A DNA stretch of 60,633 nt, filler included, from Platydemus manokwari (GCA_037951405.1; 6 parts of 6 records of this genome joined end to end with filler, not necessarily neighbours in it); one strand, 5' to 3'. Shown: positions 11,142-20,685, numbered from the whole stretch's first letter. Made by a program: numbers and translations. Notes: a model not told the origin generated them from the letters alone.

Positions 11142-11574
11142 ATGAAAATGATTAAATCTAAATATCGCAATCGACTCAATGATGAACATCTGAATTCATG
11201 CTTACGTTTGGCACTTAGTAATTATGCGCCATCCTATGAAAAGTATGCAGATGATATGCAGTGTCATTCTTCAGCATCAAAATAGCACTAGTTGTATCTT
11301 TACGATTAATAAATCCGTATAACCATTTATAAATTTTGTATTTTATTTTTATCCAGTGACTATATTCTAATCCAGGGGTGTTCAAACAGTCGATGATCCA
11401 GGGGCGGAATTATACTATCGCCAGTCCCCCAAGGCGAGACGGGCCTACAGCAGCTCATTCCAAAGGCCGGAAAGTGCTTTTGCACGGAGCGAGAACAAAA
11501 TTTGTACCAGTCGATCACTTGCCGCCTAATATTTTTGTAGTCGATCGCCAATGGTTTAAGTCTGAGCACCCCTG
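11142..11574 (+). mobile_element. hAT (Buster/SPIN-type) transposon 3' end: dimerisation-domain coding tail plus TIR(s)
   Basis: 11142-~11285 reads MKMIKSKYRNRLNDEHLNSCLRLALSNYAPSYEKYADDMQCHSSASK*, typical of the Buster/GTF2IRD2-like C-terminus. Inverted ends CAGGGGTGTTCAAAC (11373) and GTCTGAGCACCCCTG (ends 11574); flanks ttcTAatc / gtcTAagg fit the Buster NNNTANNN target. Confidence 0.85.
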
Positions 11575-11582
11575 GTCTAAGG

Positions 11583-12101
11583 TAAAATGATTGTTAAAAA
11601 TATGCAAGAGTGATGGAAAATCCTAGATACCAAGTACCGAATCTCAGCATCAATATAAACTGATGGATTTCCATCACAATTCACTCTCAAAAAATTCGAC
11701 ACGATGATATCCTAGTTTACGACATAGATATTGAAAGAGGAAAATTGAATTGAATGGTAAAGAACCAATAATATTACATTAATATTTTTAAATTAAATCT
11801 AAACAAATTATCATTTAACTCTAGAGGATTTGCCTTTGGAGTCAATAAATCAGATAAAATCTATATTAAAATTTTAAGATGCAAGTTTTGGGTTCTCACG
11901 GTCTCTGTGAGATAACCTTACATATCTGTTTATATAAATTTCTTAGTGTGACTTAAATTTTTCTGTTTGTAAATTTGTTTTGCGATAAATAAAGTTTTTA
12001 ACAAATTTGAGTGTTTTTTCGATCTTTCGATTTAAATATAGCAAGTTAACTCGCGCTGTTGAGTTGACGAAACAACTTTTAACATCACATACAATCCAAC
12101 A
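11583..12101 (+). mobile_element. LTR family A, partial copy
   Basis: Similar to the inverted copy at 47579-48291 (gtgatggaaa...aagtaccgaat...catcacaattcactct; cgctgttgagttg...ccaaca end). Confidence 0.7.
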
Positions 12102-12315
12102 CTTTAAATATTTTTATTATATTAAACGAGCGATCAAGCGACAACAACCTCTTATCTGTTTGGAGTCCAGATAAGTTGACGATTTTTGAGTGAATATAAT
12201 TATTAGATTAAAATCCTTCTGATAATCATTATAGTATTAGTTACATCGTTTACAAACTGTACATTTGTAATTTTAATTTATAATTACTATAAAACCACCT
12301 CGACAATCTTTAACA
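12102..12315 (+). mobile_element. LTR family B, 3' part
   Basis: aagcgacaacaacc..ttatc.gtttggagtccagataagttga...tgtacatttgtaattt...cgacaatctttaaca matches the 3' end of the solo LTR at 44289-45440. Confidence 0.75.
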
Positions 12316-14371
12316 AAATTCAAGGACAAACAAAATGCTATTTTTTGACAATTTGGAGATTTGTCTAAAGATAGAGTAAAAACTAAATGAAGAGGTGAAG
12401 AGAAATCGTAAGTACAGTTATAAGCAGAGATAAAGTAAATTTGGATTGATAGACTTTGGAACAGGTGAGCTCAAAAACCTTAGAATACATTGAAATGAAA
12501 TATTAAAAGAATTTGATGAAAATAAAGTAAAAAATTCGAAAAAGAAAAATACTGTGAACATAAATTGGGTAACAATATGACTCGTTTTAAAGAAATCCGA
12601 GGGAAACTTTGGAGTATCACTGACCAAGAATCGTGAAATTTCGAATTGGAAAAAAATGGAAAGTGAATTTTGTGCAGTGCTATCATCTCAGATTTGGAAA
12701 AGTAACGTTACTAGTTTAGGATTTTGACGAGTCATAATGAGTATTTTGGATGCGATAAAAGGAAAACTAATGGAAAAGTTTTAGACACTTATGTTACAAA
12801 TCTTCTAAGAAAGGTTGTATTTTCGGAAGATTGATATTATATATTAGATTTCGGCACGGAACACTCCGCTTATGTATTTAAATCAGTTGTTGAAGGATGA
12901 CAATTATTTGTTGATAATTATTATCCTCCCAGAAATGGATATTATGGTAAAAACTGAAGATGAATACTTTTGGAAAAGAGAAGTTCCTGTTGACATTGTA
13001 AGCAAAATTTGGTTGACGATGAATATTTACTTGATTAAGAAATTCTTACTAGAAAGATTTGTTAGGGATCATATATATAATTGAATATGGATACAATTAT
13101 AATAAAATAATATGTAAAATAAAAATTTCATAAAATAATATGTAAAATAAAATTTTCATAAAAGTTTCTTTATTCTCTACAAATCTATTCTTTGTGTATA
13201 AATAAATGGGTTAAATAAAAATCATTTAAAACTAAAACAAAGACGCCAGTGTTTAAATAAAAATCATTTAAAAACCACTTAGTACGAAAACAAAGACACT
13301 ATTACTGAAAAATAAACAAAGCAATCAGCAAACAGGCAATACAAAGCTCAATATTAGAAGAAATTTAAACAAAAACATATACACAAAGCTACGCTTTGTT
13401 CCATAGAGCTCCATACAAAAAATAGTATAAATACTGAGCATTGTCTCAGTCTAAACGCCTTACAACGCTGTAGTTAGACAAATTCGTATAATCTTAATGA
13501 CTCTCTTGCAACAACGATCTATTATGAGTAATTACTATTTATTCACTCTTATCTCTTCAGTTATAACTGCAATCCCTTTACGGGCTTGTCAGCACATATA
13601 ACTACTCTATCTTTCTAATCTTTAACCGGGTCCAGGTCTGTGTCCGAGCTATTAGGCGGCACCCATCATCTTCAGGGATAAGAATCGAAGCTTATCTTCT
13701 AGCAACTCTTCATCTAACAATTTAGTTATTCAGCTTGTATTTATTGTAAAAAGTTAATAAATATTATACGCTTCAATTTGTTGTTTTGTATTGTCATAAG
13801 GGTATTAAGAGTGCTAGTATCCGAAATTGATATACACGTTAGAAGAAGCACGGGCTCTTCTGACAGCTAAAATGAATAATTATATGAAACTCACTCCGTC
13901 GAGAGAGCAAACAAACACCTCCAATGGGTTACAAACTCCATGTCTATCACCGATAGTCATGCGCGCAGAGAAAGCATACACCTGCAATGAATACGAGGAA
14001 GAAGCCGAGACACGTGGGAAATCGAAGAAATTCCCAAGGAAAATTCAAATTAAGCTAAAAAAAGTCTCACATAAGTAATCACTGCCGAAAATGTGCTCGC
14101 AACCATTGAATTAATAACTGAGGAACAATCAATGTTGACTCAGTTTGCCGTTAACTTAGTAAGGGAAGCTCAAAGGAACCCTCAAGATGAACAAATGATC
14201 AAGATTATCTTAAAGAATCACATTTACACTACTATACCTACCGATGTATTGGCTGCCGCCGCACCAATACTGGTTGAAATCTTGGACAAAGGAGCCATTT
14301 ACCGAAAGGAAGTACAGTTACTCCTACAACGAAATGGGCTAGCCATTCGGAGTCAACCGCAAGAAGCACCT

Positions 14372-14590
14372 ATGCTCACGCTACACATTCGGACCAGTCA
14401 TCACGGGAACTGGCTAAAGACATACTCTTGCTTCACCATGTTCGCAAACTAAGGCAGGATATCAGACAAGAAAAATCAATCACGGAGCCATTCATTATCA
14501 CAATTCAATCGAATCCGGTAGATGATGACGAATATTTAGCTGACGTAGGCTGCTTACCAGACATCGTCACAGTAGTAAAGGTACTAATAA
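14372..14590 (+). pseudogene. Ubiquitin-like domain split by a 1-nt frameshift at ~14439
   Basis: Joined reading MLTLHIRTSHHGNWLKTYSCFTxVRKLRQDIRQEKSITEPFIITIQSNPVDDDEYLADVGCLPDIVTVVKV follows the ubiquitin beta-grasp pattern. Confidence 0.55.
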
Positions 14591-14839
14591 CGCCAGTGGA
14601 ATCCAAAAAATGGAGGCGAATACCCACACTGTCCAAGGCAGAAATCGAACCAGCAACTGGAAGAGTGGAGACACAGTTACCGGTAGATTTGGATGAGGAC
14701 ACACAGGCCACCAGAGCCGGCTGAAAATGAAATCATAGAAATAGTGGACCTCTATCCACCAGCTATTGAAACCAATCAGAACCATGAGGAAATCATACGG
14801 GAGATAGAAAACCCTCCTCCAGAACCATAGCCACCGATT

Positions 14840-17395
14840 GTGCCAACACAGGACACTAGTGGACCACCGCGGAAACGAAGAAACAGAGACACACACGCCC
14901 GCACCAACAGTCAAGTACAAGCACAGTTGCTACGAGGACTTGCGGACGGCACAACTATAAATTCCAAGCAAGACATCCAGCAATGTCTCTTGCAAATTGC
15001 GAAAGGGATTGATCCCTATGATCAACGCTTAACAGAAGTAACCACCGAGGGTTACGAAAAACTACTCAGTGACATAAGCAGATATATGCCTAGGATTCGA
15101 CAGTTCACACATGATCATCCCACCGTTGATTCAGAAAACGTGTTATGGGAAATTATTAAAGACGGAATCACTGCATCAAGAGCCAAGATCATACTGATCA
15201 ATTTGGCAAATAAAATTATGATGGCGTCATATGGAGACACATCACACTACCAAGAAACATTGCAACAAACAATCAAATTAGCCCATCAAAACATTGGGAA
15301 ATGGATCCAAACGCAAGGAGGATGGACTCAGTTTGGATACAGCGAGTCGCTTACCACAGAAGGATTGGGTAACCTCAACAATAATGGGTTAATGAACACG
15401 CTGATCAAGGTTATTCTCATATGCAGCTTGATAGGGAAAACATCTATGCTCACCGCATATGATTGTTCGAACCATAAGCTGTCCACCATCTATTCGTTAG
15501 TTGATCTGTTTGAATGTCCAGCAGTCAATGTCAACAGCGTTAGACAAGGGCCACGGGAGTCCTATTATGTGTACCAGGAATTAGAATTCTATCGAACCAC
15601 AATCAAGGAATGCAGGGTCACGAAGGCCAAATTCGAATACTGTTGCGGAGCCTTTAGCCGCTCATCTGTATTAGATGCCAAACTTATCGCTCACAGCATC
15701 ACAATCGCACCTGAAGCCTGCCAAGATGCATTCGTACAAGGAAAACTCAGAGTCGACAGCGAGGTCACTCTCACAGCAGACGTAGGTAAGAGACTTGCTG
15801 AAACCATCACATGCGGAGGTAAAATTGAAACAGACGGGACATGTATCGGACGAAGCAAAAGCCGCAACGGAGACATAGTCTCTCATGTGGTAGAAATCGA
15901 AGATTACACCGTCCAATTAGTACAATATGAAGGGACGTTTGACATGAAAACTGAAAAAATGACTCAGTACCCACAGTGCGTATCCAAGTTCAATAGCTGC
16001 AATGTAGACGGAGCCACATTAGTATACGAAGCTCGACGAGCTTACTGTGACGTGGCACTACTCAAGCAAGCATCGTTCATCGCAATCAACGGAAGCGCAT
16101 GGGATCACCAGATTCCAGGAAAACGACAGCTGACACAAGGCCGACTAGATGGACGAATCGAAGAAAAGACCTTGGTCAAAAAGAGTGCTTCAATGTCCGA
16201 CCAACAAACCGACGCCATACGATTGATACGTGGACAGTCACTGGATAAATGTGGGATACTAATGTACGAAACAAACTATCAAGGGATCTATGTGAGCCAT
16301 CAGAGCGCTCGAGATGCCAAAATGCTGAATGTCAAGGACGTCCAACTCACTACATACACCAACAACAAGGGCGATTACCTATATCACGATCTGCTGCTAC
16401 AATTAGCTGAGATCTATCAGGAAACCCAGCATCATCAGTGCAAACGGAACCAAGAAATCGCACAAAACCGCATGGGCATAATTATGACGAATCAAGACCT
16501 CGAAACACCCATTCTGATGGAAAATGGGGTGTATGGTCGAATCAGTGGTGAAGCATGGCACACGTACGAGTGTGAGCCAATTCAAGTCGCCATCGCAGAC
16601 ACTAAGAAATGCACAAGGGAGTTAGCAGTAATCTATAAGGAACAAACCAGGTATATTCAACCAATCACGCACATCTTGCTTCCGGCAGGGACTCCACCAC
16701 AAAAGACAGAATGTAATCCAATGATTTCACCATTGTACAAAATTAATGGACAATGGGTGACTATACCGGATCGAAGATCACCTCGCAGTCCAGTACAACT
16801 GCTTAGGTTGGGAAACTCATTGACTACTCGCGAATTCCAGCCCATACAGGACTTGGAGAAAAGGGGAGTCTACACGTCTAAGGACATTGTCGAAGCACTT
16901 AGAGGATTAGGATTTCCCGAGCTCCGAGCAAAGGGAATAACAGAAATCATTAGGACAATTTATCTCGATAGTGCAACCAGTCCGAACTATGATCACTTGT
17001 TCACAATGGAACATTTCAAGAAAGCTGCTCATCATGTAGCCTATCAAATATGAGGAGCCTTCCCAGCTTTCGGAACATTCATTGCAGGATGCACAGGGAT
17101 TTATGTCATCTGCATAGGACTAAAAGTCATCATACAACGACTAGTATTCATATATTACTGGTACAAACTGTTCGTTTGTTCATCAAAAATCATCCGCGGC
17201 ATGTGCCCGATAGTCGACAACCGCCTTTTTCATAAACATCATCATGGAAGTATGTACAAAATAAAAGAGATGATAAGAGAGATGAGACACGAAGTTCACG
17301 CCTCTTTTCGACCCGCCGTTCTCGAAGAACAGGAAAAATACTACCCCTCCGACGAGGATAATAACGTTAACTCATATGCTCGCATCTTATACTAA
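14840..17395 (+). CDS. Polyprotein segment: Bcl-2-like domain + hydrophobic helix + chuvirus-like envelope glycoprotein (one in-frame TGA at 17051-17053)
   Basis: BH1-like EIIKDGITASRAKIIL (15149-15196); BH2 WIQTQGGWTQF (15302-15334); hydrophobic LMNTLIKVILICSLIG; glycoprotein from LTAYDC (15449) with chuvirus G Cys pattern and motifs CG-x4-T, YxNxK-x-xY, GE-x-x-x-x-xCxP, PxYxIxGxW, GVYT...FPE. TM segment follows the TGA in the same frame. Confidence 0.85.
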
Positions 17396-17870
17396 TAATA
17401 CGCAAACGGATTGGGATGTTCATCTCACCGCCTGCCTCTACGCGTATCGAAATGCTGTTCAAGCCAGTACAGGATATTCGCCATTCTATTTAATGTACGG
17501 TCGAGAAAGCAATTTACCAGTGGACGTACAAATAGAACCAAGAGTAACTCAATATATGGACCACGAAGATTACGCAGTTACGCTCAAGGAACGTTTAAGC
17601 AATGCCTGGCAGAGAGCTAACCTTAATCGCAAATTTCATTAAGAACAGACGAAGGAACAATACGATAAGCACACCGCTGAACGAATTCAACGTCGGAGAT
17701 GCTCAAATCAAAACATGCAAGAAAGGTATATCCGGCAAATTAGTAAGGCCATTCAAGGCCCCTATGTCATCGACAGGGTCACGGATACTAATTTTGTTAT
17801 TCGACCTATTAGCAATTCCGCTGCCGAACCAATCTGGGTTCACGCAAATAGGTACAAGAAATACGAAGAG
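17360..17870 (+). pseudogene. Gypsy integrase C-terminal half and GPY/F module (frameshifted)
   Basis: TLTHMLASYTNNTQTDWDVHLTACLYAYRNAVQASTGYSPFYLMYGRESNLPVD; KLVRPF/QGPYVIDRVTDTNFVI...WVHANRYK. Confidence 0.9.
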
Positions 17871-17949
17871 ACTGCATCTCAGCCAGTAAGCACCACTGCA
17901 CATAAACGAAAAAAGGAGCAGGATGTCCTGAAGGCATCCGGAAGCAGAT

Positions 17950-18733
17950 ATCCTCTCCTATCACAGCTGATCACACTCACAATATTGAACCTTCTCAGGA
18001 AGTGCATCACTCGCCCCCATTGGTCGAACCAAATTGGACTTACGATTGGGGAGTATTTTGGCTAGGAGTTACAGCTCACCAGGAGCCGCAATATCACTAC
18101 AGCACAACACTTGTCGGTCAAGACGAGATTGGCCGCACACAACATTACACCGCACGATGCATCTTCAATCAACTGCGACATGGCCAGATCTTTGAGGTCA
18201 CTACTACTTAATGGGCTAGGAGAAATAACACTTATCATGAAACGGATAAAGGCGAAGCCCGAATACAACTTGTAAGGTTTAAAAAGGGTGCAAATGTTCC
18301 TGCTACCTATTCACATATCATCATCAAACAAAAGGAAGAGCACATCTTCATGATATCGGATAAAGAAGGGGAGTATCACTTTCCACGAAATCAGTGTCAG
18401 CGAAAGGTCCAAAAGAAAAAGCGTAGAAAATCACAGCGAAAAACTACATTATCAACTACAGCACGCAGCACAACGAATAAGCGCACAATAATCAGCACGG
18501 AAATTATGCCTGTCACTATGGAAAATCAGGCACTACAGGAAGCCGAACAACGAGCCAGTGTAATGGTTATTATTATTTGCACCTGTGTGTTAGTTCTGGT
18601 TATTGCCACACCAATTGTGATATTCCAATGTAAAAGGAAAACGCATCACAGAATCCGATATACTTGGCACGAAGGAAATGACTCTCCAGCTTCCATGCTT
18701 ACAGCACTAACGCACCAAGTCACTACCTTATGA
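17950..18733 (+). pseudogene. Putative type I membrane protein after integrase (frameshifted)
   Basis: Hydrophobic LITLTILNLL after RYPLLSQ; Thr-rich stalk; TM VMVIIICTCVLVLVIATPIVIF (18560-18625) followed by QCKRK. Confidence 0.5.
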
Positions 18734-18826
18734 CAATTACAGTATAACGATATTAAAGTTAATATCCTCCATAAATTATATATCTTTATTTATATCTACA
18801 GTGTACTCTGCAACGAGCAATGTTTA

Positions 18827-20685
18827 ATGTTGAATTTCAACTATTATTATTGCCAGTCCATTAATCACCTTGTTTTGGATTCCAGAACGTACCAAATTCA
18901 ACAATACAATCATTATGGAATAGAAGCTAACGCGGGAGGTCGACCCATGAGTATTAGCTCTTATGAGGTTGAACCAATTATTGGCACCAACTTCCATAAA
19001 GAGATGAGCATAAACGTAGCACACAATCGACGTTGGCGATATTATGACAATCAAACGCTTCTACTGAATAATCTCAAATTTGAAGGGCAAGGACCTCGCC
19101 ACATATCTATGGTCTTCATAGACCAGGCGGAAATTAAAGAATTAGTGACAAAGCAAACCAGGCGTACAACACGGAGGTAGTCCATCTCACTACTACCGTC
19201 CAGCCAATCGAAATCAGAATTGCCGGCGTTTTCGAAACTATCAAATTAGAAAAAGTTTCCAACCTGGAAATTCTTCAAAGTGATATGAAGCTCAAATCGG
19301 CGCTAATCGTTAGTCATCGCGTACCGAATACGTTGGTACTAGAAATGGGATTCAGTGATATCATAAATATTCTTCGAATTCCCCTTTCTTACTACGACAA
19401 TACTATCTCGCAACAAGTGATTCACAGTTATCACTCATTTCTACGACAAACACTGTCCATCGAGGATCTTAAATCTCAGACACTGTTCATTGCTGCCAGA
19501 ATAGCATATGCAGCTCCACGAATCAATGACACTTACACGAAAACCGTCGCTTTAGCCGTCACCATCTGGAACTACGAAGGTCACGAGCAGGGCAACACAA
19601 AAATCACTCCACGTGAATACATTCGACACTGGAGAAACGATGGAGCAGATGTGTGGCGAGAAGCAGATATCATCGGCCAAATGGACGAAATCAAATGCAT
19701 TCGTCGAGTCAATACCATCGTGGATCAACACCTATTAGTAGGTTACAAAGTGGCCGAATTATTGGAACCTTTCCGCATACCATCAAACCGTCTGCTAGGT
19801 ATACGAGACCTATACCGAGCCAAAAGCCTCGCCGTATATGGAATAGTGCATGTAGCCCACTTTGCATGGCACAAAATCTTGAAACAGGTGGTGCTGAACT
19901 ACCAACCTGGTCGATTGAGCTCAAACAGAACTGTTAATATACTAGAAGAGATTCGTAGCGTCTACCTCGAATTAGAATACAAGTGGATCGACCACTACCC
20001 CATACCAGACGACGAACTATTGAATAACGAAGAAACCAACAAAAGCGCGTTGCAATTTCAGTTGAGTTTGATGCCACAGAGATCTAAAAGGAAGCCTGAA
20101 GAGCCCGCGGTCAAACGGTCAAAGGCATCAACTAGCAATGAAAATGGTGAAACACGGACCGCTTTTCCGTTCATTAAATCACGAGCCAAAATAGCCCCTG
20201 ACTAATCTGAACGAATAAAACCCGTTTCACAGGTTAGGCAGATAGAAATTGCAGAAAACCCTCGAATTGTCGCCATGGATCCATCTAAGAAGGTTACTAT
20301 CAAAAAAGCAGTCACAGCTGTTCCACTCAACCACTCAAGAGTTGTAGAAGTGGATAAATCTAAAACAGCCACCTCAAAGGACATTATCAGTCAAAAGCAA
20401 TTCAGCATCGAACCTTACAAAGGCCCCGTCAATTGCTTCCATAAGACAACCCGCGTCATCTGATCTCGACGGGATGCTCGATCCCTCAGGACTACCATAT
20501 CTGCCACAGGATATCTTAAGATACTTCGAAGACGACAACAAGCTATGGTTCTTAACTCAGCTTACGTACACTTGTTCCGATCAGCTCTTTCCAGGAACAG
20601 TAAGCTTAGAGTTCGCTAACAGAGACTTGGAAATCGCTAGACAATATCCGGAGCGAGCGCAACGAGAAAGTTGTAACTGGTGTAA
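18827..20685 (+). pseudogene. Unknown accessory ORF of element 1 (fragments 18827-19180, 19285-20205, 20275-20463, 20474-gap)
   Basis: Consecutive same-strand ORFs of 117, 306, 62 and >70 aa with the same composition as the element; no motif recognised. Confidence 0.55.

What the first reader, a model, noticed from the sequence alone, without database searches (positions are those of the whole stretch)
14840..17395. Gypsy retroelement encoding a Bcl-2-like protein fused in-frame to a chuvirus-like fusogen, placed upstream of pol
Seen: one open frame carries BH1-like EIIKDGITASRAKIIL and BH2 WIQTQGGWTQF (Bcl-2 has WIQDNGGWDAF), a hydrophobic helix, then ~530 aa starting LTAYDC with the Cys spacing and motifs of chuvirus-type glycoproteins; integrase comes after it. 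Known: chuvirus G has been captured by BEL/Pao elements in insects, env genes normally lie 3' of pol, and viral Bcl-2 mimics are typical of large DNA viruses. Inference: this is a virus-like retroelement that co-produces an apoptosis modulator and an envelope protein from one polyprotein, potentially keeping host (stem/germ) cells alive while spreading between cells. Giant Gypsy elements with extra domains (Burro) are reported in planarians, so parts may be described; I do not recall the Bcl-2::G fusion upstream of pol being described.
Basis: partly seen in the sequence, partly recalled or inferred. Interest (0 to 1): 0.93.

Follow-up and report, generated by a model that had tools for sequence, protein, structure and literature searches.

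The report
Decayed Burro-like endogenous retrovirus fragment
This is a broken-down piece of a giant virus-like jumping gene of a kind already described in planarian flatworms, in which a probable cell-death-blocking (Bcl-2-like) domain sits directly in front of an envelope protein taken from negative-strand RNA viruses; the layout is real but it is not new, and this copy is dead.

Summary
The reading frame 14831-17392 (+) is real. Its larger part is a full-length fusion glycoprotein of the Monjiviricetes type (Pfam PF24664, E=1.8e-58, profile 5-617 of 653 covered), interrupted by one in-frame stop. The roughly 200 residues before it give Bcl-2 as the best Pfam family, but below threshold (E=0.001-0.02; 16-20 bits against a cut-off of 31.4). 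Weak PDB matches to BFL-1/A1 span the whole fold. Both fold tests failed for lack of relatives, so the models were poor. The "hydrophobic helix" is by homology the glycoprotein's own signal peptide, preceded by an in-frame Met. No protease, reverse transcriptase, RNase H or LTR lies in the piece. Only a weak integrase C-terminal remnant follows the glycoprotein, so "Gypsy" and "upstream of pol" cannot be shown for this copy. The literature already describes the layout. Giant Gypsy-like Burro elements of planarians carry BCL2-like then env (hits to mononegavirus fusion glycoproteins) in one ORF between gag and pol (PMC6431247). GAG-ENV-POL elements are reported from Platyhelminthes, Nematoda and Bryozoa (PMC13524379). 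Best reading: a decayed, truncated, internally deleted Burro-like copy. Interest is low; the architecture is already known.

The parts
11642..13800 (.). AT-rich stretch without long open frames (flank or non-coding part); holds short tandem and direct repeats
   Evidence: GC 13-30%. 28-nt tandem repeat at 13102-13163. 48-nt direct repeat at 13216-13316. No Pfam, tRNA or Rfam hit.
13818..14830 (+). Remnant of coding sequence upstream of the Bcl-2-like domain (presumed earlier part of the polyprotein). Broken: at least 3 breaks (frameshifts and stops). No recognisable domain.
   Evidence: Excess of open stretches on the + strand only. Break count. No Pfam family.
14831..17392 (+). One reading frame: Bcl-2-like domain, linker, signal peptide, fusion glycoprotein with membrane anchor and tail. 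Broken once (one in-frame stop, no detectable frameshift). No start codon ahead of the Bcl-2-like domain.
14966..15331 (+). Bcl-2-like all-helical domain (probable, sub-threshold)
   Evidence: PF00452 is the best Pfam family: E=0.0011-0.0025, 19-20 bits, profile 17-100 of 100. PDB BFL-1/A1 matches over nearly the whole chain at E about 0.3. The model is all-helical but pLDDT is 45.
15392..15448 (+).
   Evidence: The PF24664 profile match starts at profile position 5, three residues after this Met. Hydropathy peak.
15401..17278 (+). Region matching the Monjiviricetes fusion glycoprotein profile (positions 5-617 of 653): a full-length G
   Evidence: Pfam PF24664 E=1.8e-58. Pieces score 9.2e-18, 1.6e-42 and 3.8e-07 in register. 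16 Cys and one N-glycosylation sequon in the ectodomain.
17057..17161 (+). Hydrophobic membrane anchor of the glycoprotein, followed by a cytoplasmic tail to 17392
   Evidence: Kyte-Doolittle windows above 1.5, within profile positions 543-617.
17355..18062 (+). Integrase C-terminal remnant. It lacks the zinc-binding and catalytic parts and is spread over two frames (at least 1 frameshift). Only 17355-17522 has a (weak) match; the rest is my reading.
   Evidence: Best PDB hit is Ty3 Gag-Pol polyprotein 1274-1329, E=0.3. No Pfam rve hit. Break count.
18212..18730 (+). Open stretch with a strongly hydrophobic segment followed by basic residues; function unknown
   Evidence: Hydropathy up to 3.1. 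Only sub-threshold Pfam hits to membrane-protein families.
19138..20202 (+). 355-codon open stretch, real coding by length, an orphan. It may be an accessory ORF of the element or part of a neighbour.
   Evidence: P about 1e-9 per start. No Pfam family. No homologue. Not on record.

Best explanation
The piece holds a decayed fragment of a giant Gypsy-like endogenous retrovirus of the Burro kind known from planarian flatworms.

In intact members, one huge polyprotein runs Gag ... BCL2-like - Env - protease - RT - RNase H - integrase. What is left here is:
- about 1 kb of broken upstream polyprotein;
- a probable Bcl-2-like domain;
- a complete Monjiviricetes-type (chuvirus/mononegavirus-like) fusion glycoprotein with its own Met and signal peptide, ectodomain, membrane anchor and tail (one in-frame stop);
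- directly after it, only the tail end of integrase (protease, RT, RNase H and most of integrase are missing);
- then broken downstream ORFs.

How intact relatives would work (inferred):
- The polyprotein is made at the ER.
- The internal signal peptide right after the Bcl-2-like domain sends the G ectodomain into the lumen.
- The anchor stops transfer, so that pol is again cytosolic.
- Signal peptidase and the element's protease separate the parts.
- This leaves a cytosolic, perhaps membrane-tethered, Bcl-2-like survival factor and a surface fusogen that lets particles pass between cells.

This copy cannot do so. It is a fossil.
For: Shown:
- G is a full-length member of PF24664.
- Bcl-2 is the top Pfam family for the domain just before it, and BFL-1/A1 are the top biologically sensible PDB hits.
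- Both lie in one frame.
- The best PDB hit of the stretch after G is the integrase part of Ty3 Gag-Pol.
- The + strand from 13.8 kb to the end has 12 open stretches of 100 codons or more, against 1.1 expected and 1 on the - strand, and is A-rich as retroelements are.
- Break counts: at least 3 upstream, 1 in the Bcl-2-like::G frame, at least 1 in the integrase remnant, at least 5 downstream.

Literature:
- PMC6431247 reports for Burro the same neighbours in the same order and frame: BCL2, then env with hits to arthropod and fish mononegavirus fusion glycoproteins, then PR. It also reports decaying fragments in a third planarian species.
- PMC13524379 reports GAG-ENV-POL elements in Platyhelminthes.
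- The AT-rich flank fits the >70% A/T planarian genome (PMC11410931).

Inferred: the topology and processing model, and the anti-apoptotic role.
Against: - There is no RT, protease, RNase H, LTR or primer-binding site in the piece, so retroelement membership rests on a weak integrase match (E=0.3) and on architecture.
- No sequence comparison with Burro or with any other copy was possible. The source organism is unknown, and the frame and its neighbours are absent from the protein collections.
- The Bcl-2 match is below Pfam's threshold. Sub-threshold hits of similar E-value occurred for another stretch of this piece and look spurious.
- Fold tests were empty.
- The Bcl-2-like::G frame is less broken than its neighbours: 1 break against about 5 expected, P about 0.03. 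Uniform decay does not predict this.
- The 2019 review also reports an HHpred likeness of Burro env to gypsy Env (F-type), so the fold class of this G is not settled.
Confidence: 0.7

Rival explanations
1. A non-retroviral endogenous viral element: the G gene of a chuvirus-like RNA virus was integrated on its own and merely lies among unrelated retrotransposon debris. The upstream 200 residues are not part of a designed fusion.
For: - G keeps its own Met and signal peptide.
- G is far better preserved than its neighbours.
- No pol domain adjoins it.
- Chuvirus-derived solo glycoproteins flanked by fragmentary Gypsy/BEL-Pao copies are common in arthropods (PMC7642597, PMC10084718).
Against: - The frame stays open for about 190 codons upstream of the G start, and that stretch gives Bcl-2 as the best Pfam family. 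This is exactly the neighbour reported for Burro env.
- Composition and coding strand are uniform across 13.8-20.7 kb.
Confidence: 0.1
2. A host-co-opted glycoprotein gene. The G frame is kept by selection (for example as a receptor-blocking or fusogenic host protein) while the rest of the element rots.
For: - 1 break in 2.56 kb against about 5 expected from the flanks, P about 0.03.
- G has its own Met and signal peptide.
- Such a role was proposed for solo chuvirus glycoproteins in mosquitoes (PMC7642597).
Against: - The frame does carry an in-frame stop.
- The statistic is weak, and the break counts in the flanks are lower bounds that assume the flanks are all coding.
- No annotated protein of this sequence is on record.
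- There are no expression data.
Confidence: 0.07
3. The Bcl-2 likeness is chance. The N-terminal 200 residues are some other helical domain of the polyprotein. Everything else in the best explanation still holds.
For: - The score is below Pfam's gathering threshold.
- PDB E-values are 0.3-0.4, with a designed helical binder scoring better.
- phmmer against 1.84 billion representatives found no cellular Bcl-2.
- The BH1-like stretch is degenerate in the HMMER alignment.
- There is no fold evidence.
Against: - Bcl-2 is the single best of 24,736 families, at E=0.001, for a region that is neither low-complexity nor membrane-spanning.
- The alignment to BFL-1 spans the whole fold in register.
- A BCL2-like motif at just this place, before env, was reported independently for Burro.
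Confidence: 0.25

Closest known systems
Burro / GYPSM1 giant Gypsy-like LTR retrotransposons of planarians (Grohme et al. 2018; Arkhipova and Yushenova 2019, PMC6431247)
   Same: A BCL2-like motif is followed in the same ORF by an env region with hits to mononegavirus fusion glycoproteins, lying before pol. Decaying fragments with stops and frameshifts are known. The host genome is AT-rich.
   Different: Here protease, dUTPase, RT, RNase H and most of integrase are missing between env and the integrase tail. The upstream SUMO-like, MATH, BIR and Gag parts are not recognisable. Sequence identity with Burro could not be tested.
GAG-ENV-POL 'errantiviruses' of Platyhelminthes, Nematoda and Bryozoa (PMC13524379; Sacco et al. 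2022 as cited there)
   Same: The env of viral origin is placed upstream of pol in Ty3/gypsy elements, and flatworm hosts are among them.
   Different: Those are described with separate GAG, ENV and POL ORFs and an HSV/gB-type env. No Bcl-2-like domain is mentioned in the text I could search. The fold class of the window's G is untested.
Anakin: Pao retrotransposons of mosquitoes with a captured chuvirus glycoprotein (PMC7642597)
   Same: A glycoprotein of the chuvirus kind serves as env of an LTR retroelement, and solo and defective copies abound.
   Different: That is the BEL/Pao superfamily in an insect host. Env is drawn after integrase, and there is no Bcl-2-like domain.
Cellular and viral Bcl-2 family proteins (best PDB match: BFL-1 / Bcl-2-related protein A1)
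   Same: A helical domain of about 125 residues aligns over the whole BFL-1 chain. Its BH2-like stretch is well matched, and a hydrophobic segment lies about 20 residues after it.
   Different: The score is below family thresholds and the BH1-like stretch is degenerate. The hydrophobic segment belongs by homology to the glycoprotein's signal peptide. The domain is internal to a polyprotein, not a free protein.

Membership tests
Monjiviricetes fusion glycoprotein (Pfam PF24664) | Score above the curated gathering threshold | tested here: met
   198.5 bits against 27, E=1.8e-58.
Monjiviricetes fusion glycoprotein (Pfam PF24664) | Full-length coverage with signal peptide, ectodomain and membrane anchor | tested here: met
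   Profile positions 5-617 of 653 are covered in register. Hydrophobic segments lie at both ends.
Monjiviricetes fusion glycoprotein (Pfam PF24664) | Closest to Jingchuvirales (chuvirus) G rather than to other members | not tested
   Protein searches gave no named hit. Fetching chuvirus comparators was barred.
Class III (gB / rhabdovirus G-like) fusogens | Class III fold | tested here: inconclusive
   The single-sequence model has pLDDT 30. The BFVD search found nothing meaningful. PDB sequence search was empty. The literature calls chuvirus-type G gB-like, but the 2019 review also reports a likeness of Burro env to gypsy Env.
Bcl-2 family (Pfam PF00452) | Score above the curated gathering threshold | tested here: not met
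   15.7-20 bits against 31.4; E=0.022 down to 0.0011; still the best family.
Bcl-2 family (Pfam PF00452) | Helical-bundle Bcl-2 fold | tested here: inconclusive
   The model is all-helical but pLDDT is 45.5. Foldseek against PDB and BFVD gave no hit with E below 0.7; Bax chains appear only at noise level.
Bcl-2 family (Pfam PF00452) | BH1 and BH2 regions in register | tested here: inconclusive
   The HMMER alignment to BFL-1 spans residues 46-167 against 14-143. The BH2 region is well matched and the BH1 region poorly.
Bcl-2 family (Pfam PF00452) | Own C-terminal tail anchor | tested here: not met
   The hydrophobic segment after the domain aligns to the start of the glycoprotein profile and follows an in-frame Met.
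Ty3/Gypsy LTR retrotransposon | Reverse transcriptase, RNase H and protease | tested here: not met
   No Pfam hit in any + strand open stretch of 60 codons or more. These parts are absent from this copy or lie beyond the piece.
Ty3/Gypsy LTR retrotransposon | Integrase | tested here: inconclusive
   Only a tail-end likeness to Ty3 Gag-Pol 1274-1329, E=0.3. No rve or zinc-binding domain.
Ty3/Gypsy LTR retrotransposon | Long terminal repeats and a tRNA primer-binding site | tested here: not met
   No long direct repeat pair in the piece and no tRNA-related signal. The piece may simply end inside the element.
Burro-like giant elements | BCL2-like motif directly followed by env in one reading frame | tested here: met
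   One frame, 14831-17392, against the description in PMC6431247.
Burro-like giant elements | Env followed by PR-dUTPase-RT-RH-IN and preceded by Gag, MATH, BIR and SUMO-like domains | tested here: not met
   None of these domains is found. This fits a truncated and deleted copy, but is no positive evidence.
Burro-like giant elements | Sequence similarity to described Burro elements; planarian host | not testable with these tools
   No repeat library or flatworm genome is at hand. Only the AT-rich flank fits.

The most novel reading that the evidence does not exclude
Two readings go beyond what is published, and my evidence does not exclude either.

(a) In this family the glycoprotein's own signal peptide doubles as the membrane tether of the Bcl-2-like domain. 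One cleavage at the ER would then yield a tail-anchored survival factor on the cytosolic side and a fusogen on the luminal side.

(b) This particular locus keeps its G frame far better than its neighbours because the host uses it, for instance as a glycoprotein that blocks related elements.
Probability: 0.12. Interest if true: 0.55.

Novelty: already known. Interest (0 to 1): 0.2.

Why it matters
Elements that join an apoptosis regulator to a borrowed viral fusogen show how retrotransposons turn into infectious, host-manipulating agents. In planarians they sit in animals whose biology turns on long-lived stem cells. That point was made for Burro in 2019.

The window adds one more, dead, copy and two small details:
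- The glycoprotein keeps its own Met and signal peptide right behind the Bcl-2-like domain.
- It belongs to the Pfam family now named Monjiviricetes_fusion.

For the scan, the value is in showing that a finding scored 0.93 is a good reading of a known thing.

Tried and rejected
- Word-index protein searches with the whole frame, with its conserved C-terminal part and with the 355-codon downstream ORF found nothing.
- The exhaustive phmmer search with the N-terminal domain gave only two long repetitive proteins, matched in 17 and 4 weak stretches. I rejected these as artefacts.
- Exact look-ups of three ORFs of the piece: not on record.
- AlphaFold without an alignment gave pLDDT 45.5 for the N-domain and 30 for G.
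- All three Foldseek searches had no significant hit. This says nothing for or against the folds.
- PDB sequence search with G was empty, as was the search with the second integrase-like stretch.
- No tRNA, Rfam family or LTR pair was found.
- I considered and rejected an intact or autonomous element, because there is no pol.
- I rejected a Bcl-2 tail anchor, because the segment is G's signal peptide.
- I rejected the sub-threshold Pfam hits of 18212-18730 (DUF6377, TMEM154, Rifin) as driven by composition.
- Grohme et al. 2018 and Sacco et al. 2022 are not held in the paper library, so I cite them only through papers that cite them.

Full report
**What is in the sequence**

The piece 11142-20685 falls into two parts:
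- an AT-rich left part (GC 13-30% from about 11.6 to 13.8 kb) without long open frames;
- a right part of 38-47% GC that is A-rich on the + strand.

In the right part the + strand has 12 open stretches of 100 codons or more. Composition-preserving shuffles give 1.1, and the - strand has 1. This is one-directional coding debris.

Its centre is the frame 14831-17392. The frame is open but for one in-frame stop.

**The glycoprotein**

Pfam gives PF24664, Monjiviricetes_fusion ('viral fusion glycoprotein'), at E=1.8e-58 and 198 bits against a cut-off of 27. Searched piece by piece, the match runs in register from profile position 5 to 617 of 653. It ends in a hydrophobic anchor and a tail.

The match begins three residues after an in-frame Met at 15392. 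The gene was taken over whole, start codon included.

I could not show that it is nearest to chuviruses in particular, nor that its fold is class III:
- The protein searches returned no named relative.
- PDB has no sequence relative.
- The single-sequence model was useless, with pLDDT 30 and no meaningful Foldseek hit.

The literature calls the chuvirus-type glycoprotein gB-like (PMC13524379). The 2019 review of Burro, however, also reports an HHpred likeness to gypsy Env. The fold class stays open.

**The Bcl-2-like part**

For the roughly 200 residues before the glycoprotein, Bcl-2 (PF00452) is the best of 24,736 Pfam families. It scores E=0.022 on the whole frame and E=0.0011-0.0025 on the domain alone. 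The match covers profile 17-100 of 100, at 16-20 bits against a cut-off of 31.4.

PDB phmmer puts four versions of BFL-1/A1 near the top at E about 0.3. The alignment spans query residues 46-167 against chain residues 14-143. It is good in the BH2 region and poor in BH1.

Against this:
- An exhaustive phmmer search of 1.84 billion representatives found no true relative, not even a cellular Bcl-2.
- The model is all-helical but of low confidence, pLDDT 45.5.
- Foldseek found nothing.
- A membrane-rich stretch elsewhere in the piece gave evidently spurious Pfam hits of similar E-value.

On the sequence alone the likeness is suggestive, no more.

**The surroundings**

No protease, RT, RNase H, integrase core, Gag or zinc knuckle is found in any + strand stretch of 60 codons or more. 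There is no LTR pair, no tRNA and no Rfam family.

Right where the glycoprotein frame ends, another frame gives as best PDB hit residues 1274-1329 of the Ty3 Gag-Pol polyprotein. That is the end of the integrase core, at E=0.3. It is weak, but the right protein at the right place.

'Integrase comes after it' is therefore true only of a tail-end remnant. The rest of pol is missing from this copy.

Break counts (lower bounds that assume the stretches were once continuous coding sequence):
- upstream remnant: at least 3;
- Bcl-2-like::G frame: 1 (a stop);
- integrase remnant: at least 1 frameshift, besides the loss of its front part;
- downstream ORFs: at least 5.

There is no start codon ahead of the Bcl-2-like domain. 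That is expected if the domain was internal to a polyprotein.

**What is known**

Arkhipova and Yushenova (2019, PMC6431247) describe the giant Gypsy-like Burro elements of the planarians Schmidtea mediterranea and Dugesia tigrina. In their account:
- A 4,873-5,140-residue ORF1 holds Gag, several host-like domains, a BCL2-like motif, and then PR, dUTPase, RT, RH and IN.
[quoted passage not shown] - The apoptosis and ubiquitination domains may let the element meddle with host systems.

A 2026 survey (PMC13524379) reports GAG-ENV-POL elements in Platyhelminthes, Nematoda and Bryozoa. Chuvirus glycoprotein capture by Pao elements is known from mosquitoes (PMC7642597).

The weak Bcl-2 hit in the window thus sits exactly where a BCL2-like motif was reported independently. 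This raises my belief that it is real to about three in four.

**Best explanation (confidence 0.7)**

This is a decayed, 5'-truncated and internally deleted copy of a Burro-like endogenous retrovirus.

Shown: the one-frame order Bcl-2-like, signal peptide, full G, anchor and tail; the retroelement debris around it; and the breaks.

Inferred for intact relatives:
- The polyprotein is translated at the ER.
- The internal signal peptide brings the ectodomain into the lumen.
- The anchor returns the chain to the cytosol for pol.
- Signal peptidase and the element's protease cut the parts free.
- The Bcl-2-like part acts on cell survival, and G mediates cell-to-cell passage.

None of this can happen from this copy.

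**Rivals**
- A solo chuvirus-like integration among unrelated debris (0.1).
- A host-co-opted G gene (0.07). The frame has 1 break against about 5 expected from the flanks, P about 0.03, which is a weak signal.
- The Bcl-2 likeness is chance while the rest holds (0.25).

**Verdict**

The claim of novelty is not supported, so I file the architecture as already known. Membership in Burro itself could not be tested by sequence. Interest: 0.2.

I did not scan the viral or metagenome collections (search for related loci, the DNA search) with the glycoprotein or its N-terminal domain.

I fetched no chuvirus or other animal-virus comparator. I built no joined, repaired or consensus sequence. Every query was a single open stretch of one frame, given by reference.

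- My first notebook entry and the printed output of my scripts give the bounds of open stretches inside the element. The places of stops and frame changes can be read from them, and I reasoned over them before I recalled that only counts were wanted.
- The references of several tool queries carry the same bounds.
- While thinking I also recalled short textbook motif patterns of Bcl-2 homology regions and of integrase tails from memory.
- From then on I kept to counts.

Noticed in passing
window 19138-20202 (+): A 355-codon open stretch, far longer than chance allows. It has no Pfam family, no homologue in the protein collection and no record. It is an orphan ORF downstream of the integrase remnant, perhaps an accessory ORF of the element.
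   Followed up: partly
window 18212-18730 (+): An open stretch with a very hydrophobic segment of about 30 residues followed by basic residues, like a single-pass membrane protein. It has only sub-threshold, probably composition-driven, Pfam hits (DUF6377, TMEM154, Rifin).
   Followed up: partly
window 11642-13800: An AT-rich stretch (GC down to 13%) with a 28-nt tandem repeat at 13102-13163 and a 48-nt direct repeat at 13216-13316. There is no open frame and no RNA family. Whether it is host flank, a nested insertion or a non-coding part of the element is undecided.
   Followed up: partly
window 14831-17392 against its flanks: The Bcl-2-like::G frame has 1 break, where the break density of its neighbours predicts about 5 (Poisson P about 0.03). 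It is either younger than the flanks, or constrained, or the flank counts mislead.
   Followed up: partly
window 15449-17056 (G ectodomain): There is only one N-x-S/T sequon in an ectodomain of about 535 residues with 16 cysteines, which is few for a viral surface glycoprotein.
   Followed up: no
proteins P0001 and P0002: The only 'hits' of the exhaustive search with the N-terminal domain are long, internally repetitive proteins, matched in 17 and 4 weak stretches whose scores add up (E=4.8e-31 for P0001). This is a warning example of repeat-driven false positives.
   Followed up: yes
window 13642-20685 (+): There is a strong A over T excess on the coding strand (A 34%, T 23%), as in many retroelements and retroviruses. 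It is uniform across the Bcl-2-like::G frame and its neighbours.
   Followed up: no
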